Origin: Trichosphaerium sp. ATCC 40318
Taxonomy: Eukaryota > Protista > Tubulinea
Assembly (NCBI GenBank): GCA_038496445.1
Contig: JALMLS010000361.1
Span: 186,001-250,000 of the forward strand
DNA: 64,000 nucleotides
Reading direction: 5' to 3'
Below, in pieces: positions 61,261-64,000 of this stretch (positions within the stretch are counted from its first letter, which is position 1; every line of letters begins with the position of its first letter). The notes beneath the pieces are model-generated. The model made no database searches. It was not told the origin of the DNA and saw only the letters and a list, made by a program, of their open reading frames with translations. Position numbers and translations under genes: made by a program.

Positions 61261-61400
61261 CTTTGGCTCTATCTATCGCGAAAAACCCTGTAGAACGTAA
61301 AAAATAGCCTCTCCATCACGCCAATTACTCCAACGCTTCGTTTATCACAATCACGGTTGGTTTTTAATCAGTCAATTTGTTTCATAACAGCAAAACCACA

Positions 61401-63267
61401 ATGGAGGAAGGAGATGAATACATGCTTGTAGTGTACTCTGTTAAACTATTGCCGACGACGAAACTTACACCAGACACAGTGATGCCGTTTCTTGACAAAT
61501 TTGGACAAGAGTACGTTAATTTATTATAAACAACATCTCTAATGCATTAGGTGTGGTCCACCAATCTCTTTTCCGGCTGGTACGGTGTTTAAGTTTTTTG
61601 AAGTCATAAAAGAAGTTACAACGCTGGATATATTGAGTCTGGTTGGTGGCGGTACTGTTGGTAGTGATTATCCACCAGAAGATAGTTTGTGCTGTGGTAT
61701 TTTACAACCAGTACGCTATTACGCGTAATCTCGCTCTAAAACTGTCAACAGGAAGTGACACTTGCGTCAGCAGCAAAAATTGAATACTTGACAGAAAACG
61801 ATAAAGACGACTACACAAAGGCTACAAACGAGGCAAAGAAGAGAGGAGTACGTACATCTAACCTACTATGTGCTTGAACGAAGAAAGTTGGGCCAAAAAC
61901 TTAACAGTCTCACAATTTTTTAGTTGGATACAGAGTGGTTTATGACAACTGCAAGAGCGCTCGGTAACGCCTTTGCTGAAAGACTTAAAAAAGGAGGCGA
62001 TACTATCGCAATATTTGAGTAGATGTATAAATAAACTAAGTGTCACATTTCCTTGCAATGTATTCAACTTTTTGAAATGCTTCGCTGAAAATTTTGGCTG
62101 GAAAATGCGCGATTGCGGACCAAAATCCATTAGGCTAAACAAAACTGTGAGACAAAATCTACAAACACTAAAAACTCTGCAACACAATGCTTAAAGGTTG
62201 GTCATTCCGTAATATCTCTAGAGGTACATTAAAACATTGTTTGAACATAATAAAAAAAACCCAACTTCATTATTGTAACTAAAATCGCCTTAGAAACTAC
62301 CCCAGTCATAAGACTAAACCCTACAACCGTTTTACCAGACGAACTGTTAATGGAAATTTTTACACTACTACTCGACGAAACTGTTTATGGGGTACGCTTA
62401 AACGCTCTACTATACACCACGTAGTTAGATTAATTATTTTTAGACGCTACCATTAGTTTCCAAACGATTTAATTCACTAAGTAATGATGATTTGTTATGG
62501 CGATACTTTTGTAAGATGTCCTTTCCTCATTTAAAAGCACCAGTCGGTCTTAAAAGTTGGCGTAAATTCTACGTTGACAGTCAACTCCACGAATGGCGCG
62601 TTGCCCGTGCACGCGAGACTACAATAGTACAGAAATTAAAGGATGGTTTAATGGACCGCTGGACAGGTTTAAAGAGCAGGTAAGAATAAACAAGCAACCC
62701 GAAGAATTATTTTTTTCTGACATGTTTTGTAGATTGTTGGGTGAACAACAAATGGTTATTTCTGGTCCTACATCGTGCACACATACAATGCATATTGGTT
62801 TTGATGCAAATGGATTCCAAACACGTGGTATACCAGAAGAATGGCGTGTAGGATTAGCATCAAACTCAGATGAAGAGGAAGAGCCTTTAGAACGAGTAGA
62901 GGATGCCATCAAAATTGAAACTGAAGACAGACTTGATTTTGATGCAATGTCAACTGCTGAGGATATGTCTATGTCTCTTGACGATTCAGATTCCGATAGT
63001 GTATCTATGTTTGGAGACGAAGAAGATATTAAATCTATTGAAGATATGCATACTAGAACAGAAGAACTAACGTACGAAAATAATTAATTACAAAAAAAAC
63101 TTAAAACATTCGCATTCTGGCAGTGTTTTTACGGTTTTTTAATTTACTGCGCTCTCTTGAACTGTTTACTAATATCGCGTAGGACCGTTTCTATGCCTGC
63201 TCCACCACTACCACCTACAGCTATGACAAACGTATCTGAAGATGAGACTGATGATGACGATTGGTAG
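61401..63267 (+). CDS. F-box + CRIB protein with polyproline segment and acidic Trp C-terminal tail
   Basis: F-box LPDELLMEIF...LVSKRFNSLSNDDLLW; CRIB ISGPTSCTHTMHIGF...GIPEEW; last exon after intron 63072-63182 gives PAPPLPP...EDETDDDDW*. Confidence 0.8.
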
Positions 63268-63357
63268 ATAAACCAACCGTTATGTAAAAAAGAAACAAAC
63301 CAATTTTTTGTAAATAAACCCCATAAATGACATTATAATCATCCAGGTTTTTGGCAT

Positions 63358-64000
63358 TTATCGCGTGTCTACAGATGATGCTAGAGTATCGAATGCGTTT
63401 GCAAAACTAATATAATCTCCCAACTCATTGTATACTTGGCATGACACTCTTATAAACCTTCTTTGACGCATCTGTGTGCCTTCAAGAACTGGTATTTCAT
63501 ATCCTGTTATCTACATCTTTCTTTTAGGTTTTGTAATTAAGAAAAAAGAGCAACGTACCCATGCATTGTAATTTGAAATAAGTTGGGCCAGCATTTTGTT
63601 AAGATCCCAAGTATAACAGATTTCAGGGTCCGGGTGATTACAAGGGAATTGAACGTTTGTCATTGACGCCATCATATCAAGTGGTATAGGTAGCGTTGTG
63701 TTCCATCGAGTTGACATGAACAAAGCTAAATACTCAACTCAGTATTCAAATTGATCGGTGGAAATGTTTCGGTTTTCGTACTGGCGTTTCTGCACAGATC
63801 ATTGTTGTATTTGTACCACTCTCTATCCCCAACTTTAAGTCTAAATATAGTTATAAGTGTGCAACTTGTAGCGCGAGTACCTATAATTAAGAGCGTCTTC
63901 AACAGAAAGCCAGGCACTGTAATCACGTGTTCCGATAAATCCAAACTCCTTTATGTATCCTATAACAACTTAGTTTGTCTGAGTTTTATCGACAGTACCT
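63358..64000 (-). CDS. C-terminal part of a class V PLP enzyme (cysteine desulfhydrase / Egt2 / isopenicillin N epimerase-like)
   Basis: FGFIGTRDYSAWLSVEDALNYR...MMASMTNVQFP...FIRVSCQVYNELGDY; 5' end lies outside the window. Confidence 0.8.

What the first reader, a model, noticed from the sequence alone, without database searches (positions are those of the whole stretch)
61401..63267. F-box protein with WASP-like CRIB, polyproline and DDDDW acidic tail
A terminal exon missing from the ORF track adds PAPPLPP...EDETDDDDW*. Known: a C-terminal acidic-Trp motif is the Arp2/3-binding A motif of WASP/WAVE and of inhibitors such as Arpin, and CRIB binds Rac/Cdc42-GTP. No WH2 is evident. Inference: a Rac-gated SCF adaptor that binds, inhibits or ubiquitylates Arp2/3, linking proteolysis to pseudopod control.
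Basis: partly seen in the sequence, partly recalled or inferred. Interest (0 to 1): 0.72.

Follow-up and report, generated by a model that had tools for sequence, protein, structure and literature searches.

The report
Amoeba F-box protein with CRIB
An amoeba-type protist expresses a small protein that joins a ubiquitin-ligase docking motif (F-box) to a Rac-binding CRIB motif and a WASP-like acidic tail ending in tryptophan. The domain combination appears undescribed, and its link to the Arp2/3 actin nucleator rests on a short motif only.

Summary
The motifs are real, and the disputed last exon is real. Transcript contigs from two studies join 63071 to 63183, removing a 111-nt GT..AG intron, so the protein ends ...PAPPLPP...DDDDW*.

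The coordinates merge two genes. 61401-62022 is a separate 154-aa orphan gene with its own stop. The F-box gene starts at ATG 62187, with an in-frame TAA 18 nt upstream inside the transcript. It has 5 exons and encodes 264 aa.

Its layout is:
- an F-box split by an intron;
- a predicted 41-residue linker helix;
- a CRIB/PBD (Pfam 38 bits);
- about 80 acidic residues predicted as coil;
- PAPPLPP;
- EDETDDDDW*.

The CRIB matches PAK-type and amoebozoan WASP-type CRIBs equally well. The tail matches only the acidic-Trp core of amoebozoan WASP tails (usually ...DDW-SD, sometimes ending in W). There is no WH2 and no C helix.

No relative with this architecture turned up among 1.84 billion cluster representatives, in the word search, in metagenome scans or in papers.

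My best reading is an SCF adaptor that docks on Rac-GTP. Arp2/3 capture by the tail is plausible but untested.

Earlier notes of this scan, on other DNA of the same genome, record many F-box fusions and reshuffled WASP tails. This is therefore one more product of rampant shuffling.

The parts
61401..62022 (+). Separate upstream gene (154 aa, 4 exons: 61401-61510, 61551-61710, 61752-61847, 61924-62022). It is not part of the F-box protein.
   Evidence: The splice model gives an intact ORF with a stop at 62020-22. Joints 61510/61551 and 61847/61924 appear in contigs, and a contig reads through the stop to 62048. No Pfam or Atlas match.
62164..62223 (+). F-box gene exon 1: 5' UTR from at least 62164, in-frame TAA 62169-71, ATG 62187, codons 1-12 plus 1 nt.
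   Evidence: The X5 884-nt contig has 58 nt on this side of joint 62221-3/62292-4. Upstream stop found.
62294..62391 (+). Exon 2: N-terminal half of the F-box (LPDELLMEIFTLL, residues 25-40 = 62329-62376).
   Evidence: Pfam F-box-like, 16 bits, profile positions 3-17. Joint seen in X1, X2 and X5.
62444..62679 (+). Exon 3: C-terminal half of the F-box (residues 49-68 = 62453-62512) and a long linker helix (residues 81-121 = 62549-62671).
   Evidence: Pfam F-box-like, 22.3 bits, profile positions 26-45. PDB phmmer hits the F-box regions of FBXW12/19/21 at E 0.02-0.06. AlphaFold single-sequence helices 14-26 and 36-76 of the piece, pLDDT about 70-76.
62733..63071 (+). Exon 4: CRIB/PBD (residues 133-179 = 62758-62898; core ISGPTSCTHTMHIG, then GIPEEW at 62827-62844), followed by an acidic low-complexity region.
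   Evidence: Pfam PBD PF00786, E 1.7e-9, 38.2 bits. PAK1-4 PBD hits in the PDB. Alignment A1. Predicted as a beta-hairpin then coil, at low confidence.
63072..63182 (+). Intron 4 (111 nt, GTACG...TACTAAT...TAG). If retained, the protein would end YENN* at 63087.
   Evidence: Skipped in contigs of X1 and X5, with depth 0 in all four runs. Sequence read.
63183..63267 (+). Exon 5 coding part: PAPPLPP (63196-63216), acidic tail EDETDDDDW (63238-63264), stop 63265-63267. The 3' UTR runs to at least 63333, with AATAAA at 63313.

Best explanation
A lineage-restricted, expressed 264-residue F-box protein that most likely works as an SCF substrate receptor built from short linear motifs rather than a folded substrate domain.

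Shown: the gene model, its expression and splicing, the F-box and CRIB/PBD matches, and the motif content of the tail.

Inferred:
- The N-terminal F-box plugs into Skp1-Cul1.
- A long helix spaces it from a CRIB hairpin that docks on GTP-bound Rac.
- Active Rac is therefore either the substrate (negative feedback, as HACE1 and IAPs do in animals) or the signal that brings the ligase to sites of Rac activity.
- The disordered acidic C-terminal third carries one PPLP-type proline motif (a profilin, WW or SH3 ligand).
- It ends in a WASP-type acidic-Trp core that may hold Arp2/3 weakly, as a second client or competitor.
For: All four introns are removed in one 884-nt contig, and the last joint is also seen in a second study. 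The upstream in-frame stop fixes the start. PBD scores 38.2 bits against a cut-off of 21.3. The invariant I, P, H, H and P of the CRIB are kept, and the canonical Phe position varies among protist PBDs. The F-box halves sit at contiguous profile positions and sum to 38 bits against a 24.3 cut-off, and FBXW F-boxes are the best PDB matches. A linker helix is predicted. The tail matches the [DE]n-W core of amoebozoan WASP tails, two of which also end in W. Between strains, all 3 changes in exon 3 (F-box second half and linker) are synonymous, and the only 2 changes in the acidic region are conservative. Active Rac1 is a known ubiquitin-ligase substrate, via HACE1, IAPs and SCF-FBXL19 (PMC8274835).
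Against: No binding was tested. The F-box could only be scanned in two halves, each below threshold alone. No orthologue was found, so conservation of any motif is unknown. The CRIB stops after PEEWR and lacks the following helix of PAK and WASP GBDs. The tail lacks the C helix that accompanies A motifs in NPFs and Arpin. The genome is reported to hold very many F-box fusions, so some may be young and of marginal function.
Confidence: 0.5

Rival explanations
1. One reading: Rac-GTP only gates the adaptor, and the real client is Arp2/3. The DDDDW tail captures Arp2/3, which is then inhibited or ubiquitylated.
For: The acidic run plus Trp at the C-terminus equals the core of WASP-family A motifs in Amoebozoa. 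The CRIB, proline, acidic-Trp order matches WASP minus V and C. The Trp is the only one in the last 99 residues. The conserved Trp of A domains inserts into a pocket on Arp3 (PMC8810855).
Against: This is motif-level only. The WCA profile scores -6.7 bits overall and 1.8 bits on the tail. There is no C helix, which Arpin needs for inhibition, and no WH2. The proline motif is 7 residues long. No conservation data exist.
Confidence: 0.2
2. A decoy or scaffold that does not act through SCF. In this reading it is a small CRIB protein (like BORG/SPEC or plant RICs) that sequesters Rac-GTP and perhaps Arp2/3. The F-box serves only for Skp1 binding or for the protein's own turnover.
For: There is no folded substrate domain. 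The C-terminal third is predicted as coil. Small CRIB-only proteins are common among the nearest hits.
Against: The F-box keeps the canonical LPxE...I..L and V.K.F..L....LW positions, and a long linker helix typical of adaptors follows it.
Confidence: 0.15
3. A young by-product of domain shuffling in an expanding F-box repertoire. It is expressed but has no specific selected function, and the tail resembles an A motif by chance.
For: No relative turned up in any search. Earlier notes report hundreds of F-box items and many fusions in this genome. In an acidic tail, a terminal Trp has roughly a 1% chance.
Against: The ORF is intact over five exons and is the best-covered transcript of the stretch. 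The substitutions in exon 3 (F-box and linker) are synonymous only. Three motifs that co-occur in WASP proteins occur here in the same order.
Confidence: 0.15

Closest known systems
F-box substrate receptors of SCF ligases, especially FBXL19 (targets Rac1), and the non-SCF ligases HACE1 and IAPs that ubiquitylate active Rac1
   Same: An N-terminal F-box followed by a linker helix and a partner-binding part. The predicted partner is a Rac GTPase, and selectivity for the active form is the known logic of HACE1 and IAPs (PMC8274835).
   Different: The partner-binding part is a CRIB motif rather than LRR, WD40 or ankyrin repeats. I found no described F-box protein with a CRIB. There is no sequence relation beyond the F-box.
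WASP-family nucleation-promoting factors of Amoebozoa (e.g. the Cavostelium WH1-less WASP-like protein P0010, the Physarum transcript P0018, and Entamoeba CRIB-WCA proteins P0019-P0021)
   Same: A CRIB of the type I.GPT..H..H.G....GF...IP.EW, then proline motifs, then an acidic run ending in Trp. P0010 and P0014 also end in W.
   Different: There is no WH1, no WH2 and no C helix, and the proline motif is a single PAPPLPP. An F-box sits at the N-terminus. The CRIB scores the same against PAK-type PBDs (32.6 bits each). It therefore cannot activate Arp2/3 the way an NPF does.
Arpin and other acidic-Trp Arp2/3 ligands without WH2 (cortactin NtA, Abp1, myosin-I tails; the last three from my own knowledge)
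   Same: A C-terminal acidic tail with a Trp, no WH2, and a proposed place downstream of Rac.
   Different: Arpin's folded domain is absent, and so is its C helix with W195, which is needed for inhibition (PMC8810855). No homology.
F-box fusions to G-protein modules in the same genome (earlier scan notes s1-372533, s1-372451, s1-397158)
   Same: The same theme: an F-box joined to a part of small-GTPase signalling, in small expressed genes.
   Different: Those carry a dead GTPase domain. This one carries the effector-side motif that binds an active GTPase. I did not examine those genes.

Membership tests
F-box proteins (Pfam F-box-like PF12937 / F-box PF00646) | An F-box motif of about 45 residues matching the family profile | tested here: met
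   The motif is split by intron 2. Exon 2 matches profile positions 3-17 (16.0 bits) and exon 3 matches 26-45 (22.3 bits). Each half alone is below the 24.3-bit cut-off, but they are contiguous after splicing. The spliced protein has no reference, so it could not be scanned whole. FBXW F-boxes are the best PDB matches.
F-box proteins (Pfam F-box-like PF12937 / F-box PF00646) | Binds Skp1 and assembles into SCF | not testable with these tools
   Needs pull-down or co-expression.
CRIB/PBD effectors of Rac/Cdc42 (Pfam PF00786) | Profile match above the curated cut-off | tested here: met
   38.2 bits against 21.3, E 1.7e-9, profile positions 2-48 of 59.
CRIB/PBD effectors of Rac/Cdc42 (Pfam PF00786) | CRIB consensus I-S-x-P-x(2-4)-F-x-H-x-x-H-V-G | tested here: met
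   The sequence ISGPTSCTHTMHIG keeps 6 of the 8 fixed positions, with Phe replaced by Cys and Val by Ile. The Phe position is V, F or P in the aligned protist PBDs.
CRIB/PBD effectors of Rac/Cdc42 (Pfam PF00786) | GTP-dependent binding to Rac/Cdc42 | not testable with these tools
   Needs pull-down with GTP- and GDP-loaded Rac.
WASP/WAVE nucleation-promoting factors | WH2 (V) motif | tested here: not met
   No WH2 hit in any exon at E up to 1. A WCA profile built from 15 WASP tails aligns nothing to its WH2 part.
WASP/WAVE nucleation-promoting factors | Central (C) amphipathic helix just before the acidic motif | tested here: not met
   The residues before the tail are TVSMPAPPLPPTAMTNVS. The only C-like alignment lies upstream of the CRIB (residues 97-122) at 0.7 bits, which is chance level.
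WASP/WAVE nucleation-promoting factors | Acidic (A) motif with a conserved Trp at the C-terminus | tested here: inconclusive
   EDETDDDDW* matches the [DE]n-W core. 13 of the 15 comparators continue with two more residues (SD, DD or ED), and P0010 and P0014 end in W. The profile score is only 1.8 bits.
WASP/WAVE nucleation-promoting factors | N-terminal WH1 or SCAR homology domain | tested here: not met
   The N-terminus is an F-box. No WH1 hit.
Arpin | Arpin folded domain plus a C helix (W195) plus an acidic tail (W224) | tested here: not met
   No Arpin-family Pfam hit on any exon. No C helix. Only the acidic-Trp is present. Requirements taken from PMC8810855.
PAK kinases | A protein kinase domain after the PBD | tested here: not met
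   The protein ends 103 residues after the PBD, and no kinase hit was found.

The most novel reading that the evidence does not exclude
A Rac-GTP-recruited SCF adaptor that uses a WASP-derived acidic-Trp tail to seize Arp2/3 at sites of Rac activity, and ubiquitylates either Arp2/3 or active Rac itself. This would be a direct proteolytic brake on pseudopod growth, made by swapping the WH1 of a WASP-like gene for an F-box and losing V and C.
Probability: 0.1. Interest if true: 0.8.

Novelty: new variant of a known kind. Interest (0 to 1): 0.45.

Why it matters
If the CRIB really serves as the substrate-recognition part of an SCF ligase, this is a compact natural design for destroying, or acting beside, only the active form of a Rho GTPase. 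In animals that job is done by unrelated ligases. If the tail also binds Arp2/3, the protein would tie ubiquitylation directly to branched-actin control.

The protein is small and made of separable motifs, so every step can be tested with simple pull-downs and actin assays.

Two things limit its wider weight. No relatives were found, and by earlier notes the genome shuffles F-boxes and WASP tails freely.

Tried and rejected
One gene from 61401 is rejected. There is an in-frame stop at 62020-22 inside a transcript contig, a gap in coverage, and a separate start with an upstream stop.

An mRNA ending at 63087 is rejected as the main form. No contig enters the intron, although contigs cannot exclude a rare retained form.

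Relatives were sought in four ways, without result:
- The word search on the stop-free ORF window:62593-63084, region 48-164, found nothing.
- HMMER with exon 4 against 1.84 billion representatives gave 10 hits, all PBD-only and none with an F-box.
- The metagenome scan for the exon 4/5 junction found nothing.
- The tblastn-type metagenome scan found nothing.

The ESM Atlas returned only generic PBD clusters, at scores of 0.81 or lower.

'WASP-type, not PAK-type CRIB' is undecidable. The PDB shows only PAKs, but amoebozoan WASPs share the IP.EW extension and score the same.

A hidden WH2 or C helix was not found.

Paper searches found no description of an F-box plus CRIB protein. 'Arp2/3' itself cannot be typed as a search term.

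The spliced 264-aa protein has no reference, so it was never sent whole to Pfam, structure prediction or the protein searches. All of those were done exon by exon.

The upstream 154-aa gene stays unidentified.

Full report
**What is in the sequence**

The stretch 61300-63400 reads as a eukaryotic, intron-rich locus. It has 38% G+C, short introns with GTACG donors, a CTAAY branch-like element near the acceptor, and YAG acceptors.

Splicing by these signals gives two intact + strand genes, not one.
- **Gene 1** has exons 61401-61510, 61551-61710, 61752-61847 and 61924-62022. It encodes 154 aa and stops at 62020-22, with AATAAA at 62030.
- **Gene 2** has exons 62187-62223, 62294-62391, 62444-62679, 62733-63071 and 63183-63267. 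It encodes 264 aa of about 30 kDa with a calculated pI of 4.5.

**Transcript evidence**

Assembled contigs of four public runs were laid on the stretch.
- One 884-nt contig of run X5 covers 62164-63333 with all four introns of gene 2 removed. This includes the disputed joint 63071/63183, which skips 111 nt with GT..AG ends.
- A 326-nt contig of run X1, from another study, shows the same joint.
- No run has any depth at 63075-63145.
- Two of the three gene 1 introns are also seen removed (61510/61551 and 61847/61924), so these are cDNA-derived contigs whatever the run labels say.
- A gene 1 contig runs unbroken through its stop codon to 62048. No contig covers 62081-62151, and contig depths differ (5.4 against 30.9).
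- The gene 2 contig reaches back to 62164 and contains an in-frame TAA at 62169-71, 18 nt before ATG 62187.

Contigs cannot exclude a minor intron-retaining form, which would end YENN*.

**Domains**

The spliced protein has no reference, so each exon was scanned in frame.
- Exon 4 carries a P21-Rho-binding domain (PF00786) at E 1.7e-9 and 38.2 bits, against a cut-off of 21.3.
- Exons 2 and 3 carry the two halves of an F-box-like motif at contiguous profile positions: 3-17 (16.0 bits) and 26-45 (22.3 bits). The canonical LPDELLMEIFTLL and VSKRFNSLSNDDLLW strings are present.
- The best PDB sequence matches of exon 3 are the F-box regions of FBXW12, FBXW19 and FBXW21 (E 0.02-0.06).
- No WH2, WH1, kinase or Arpin family matched any exon.

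Single-sequence AlphaFold models are only moderately or poorly confident.
- They place a helix of about 41 residues (residues 81-121) between the F-box and the CRIB.
- They place a beta-hairpin at the CRIB, followed by coil through the acidic region.

The last 99 residues hold 34 Asp/Glu against 5 Lys/Arg. The only Trp among them is the final residue.

**Is the CRIB WASP-like?**

Against solved structures, only PAK1-4 PBDs match (best E 8e-5). No WASP GBD matches.

However, the nearest WASP-like hit, P0010 from the amoebozoan Cavostelium, led to a set of amoebozoan WASP-family proteins. Their CRIBs carry the same ...GF.IRNIPPEW... extension. The full protein scores 32.6 bits against a WH1-PBD WASP (P0014) and 32.6 bits against a PAK-like kinase (P0002), so the origin is undecidable.

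In an alignment of eight PBDs, the I, P, H, H and P positions are invariant. The canonical Phe position is V, F or P, so the Cys here is tolerable. Unlike the others, this PBD runs into acidic low complexity straight after PEEWR.

**The tail**

Fifteen WASP-family tails end in an acidic run plus Trp. Most continue with two more residues (DDW-SD in Amoebozoa, EW-DD/ED in animals). Two amoeba-type sequences (P0010, P0014) end in W itself.

Gene 2 ends EDETDDDDW*, which fits that core. A profile of those WCA tails does not recognise gene 2: it scores -6.7 bits overall and 1.8 bits on the tail. The residues before the tail are the proline motif, not a C helix.

The cryo-EM work on Arpin shows two things (PMC8810855). 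The Trp of the A domain binds a pocket on Arp3, and inhibition also needs Arpin's C helix. The tail is therefore a credible low-affinity Arp2/3 ligand at motif level, and no more than that.

**Relatives**

No relative was found:
- by word search;
- among 1.84 billion cluster representatives, which include EukProt transcriptomes of Amoebozoa, where 10 hits at E<=1e-3 all matched through the PBD alone and none has an F-box;
- in two metagenome scans.

Papers holding both 'F-box' and 'CRIB' or 'P21-Rho-binding' describe no such protein.

Conservation of the motifs therefore cannot be tested. The only population hint is five differences between strains. Three are synonymous changes in the F-box/linker exon, and two are conservative changes (E188D, F217L) in the acidic region.

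**Context**

Earlier notes of this scan, which I did not check, call the organism an amoeba-type protist. They list many F-box fusions, including F-box plus dead Rac, pseudo-Ras and mini-G-alpha, and many proteins with transplanted WASP tails. This makes a shuffled origin likely. It also lowers the weight of any single fusion.

**Mechanism**

In an F-box protein, the part after the F-box selects the partner. Here the only recognisable selectors are short motifs.

My best reading (0.5) is an SCF adaptor docked on Rac-GTP through the CRIB. Active Rac would be the substrate or the recruiting signal. This is the logic known for HACE1 and IAPs, and SCF-FBXL19 also targets Rac1 (PMC8274835). The PPLP motif and the acidic-Trp tail would be secondary contacts.

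The rivals are:
- a non-SCF decoy or scaffold (0.15);
- a young, marginal shuffling product (0.15).

**Verdict**

This is a real, expressed gene with a domain pairing I found nowhere else. I rate it a new variant of a known kind (an F-box adaptor with a CRIB as selector), of moderate interest.

Noticed in passing
window 61401-62022 (+): A separate, expressed 154-aa gene with three tiny introns (40, 41 and 76 nt). No Pfam match on any exon and no useful Atlas neighbour, so it is an orphan of unknown function lying 165 nt upstream of the F-box gene's ATG.
   Followed up: partly
window 63256-64000 (-): A 1529-nt minus-strand contig of run X2 reaches down to 63256. A convergent neighbouring transcript therefore overlaps the last codons and the 3' UTR of the F-box gene by at least about 78 nt (63256-63333).
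   Followed up: no
window 62597-62674 (+), residues 97-122: The linker helix upstream of the CRIB (TTIVQKLKDGLMDRWTGL) weakly resembles the WASP C helix pattern (I-V-x-x-L-x-x-x-L/M-x-x-R-x-x-x-L). The profile score is only 0.7 bits, which is chance level. It is also on the wrong side of the CRIB for a WCA order.
   Followed up: partly
window 61511-63182, all seven introns: Six of the seven donors read GTAC(G/A), and five of those six read GTACG; the seventh is GTAAG. A CTAAY-like element sits 8-20 nt before the YAG acceptor in several of the introns. Lengths are 40-111 nt. This splice-signal signature should be useful for gene modelling in this genome.
   Followed up: no
proteins P0010 (Cavostelium apophysatum, EukProt) and P0014 (JGI): These amoeba-type WASP-family proteins have an acidic motif that ends in Trp as the very last residue, instead of the usual W-SD or W-DD. 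P0010 lacks a WH1 domain.
   Followed up: partly
window 62870-63020 (+), residues about 170-220: The acidic region holds a psi-K-x-E sumoylation-type consensus (IKIE), a DSDSDS run of CK2-type sites, and two acidic Phe motifs (LDFD, MFGDEED). The Phe of MFGDEED (F217) is Leu in run X1.
   Followed up: no
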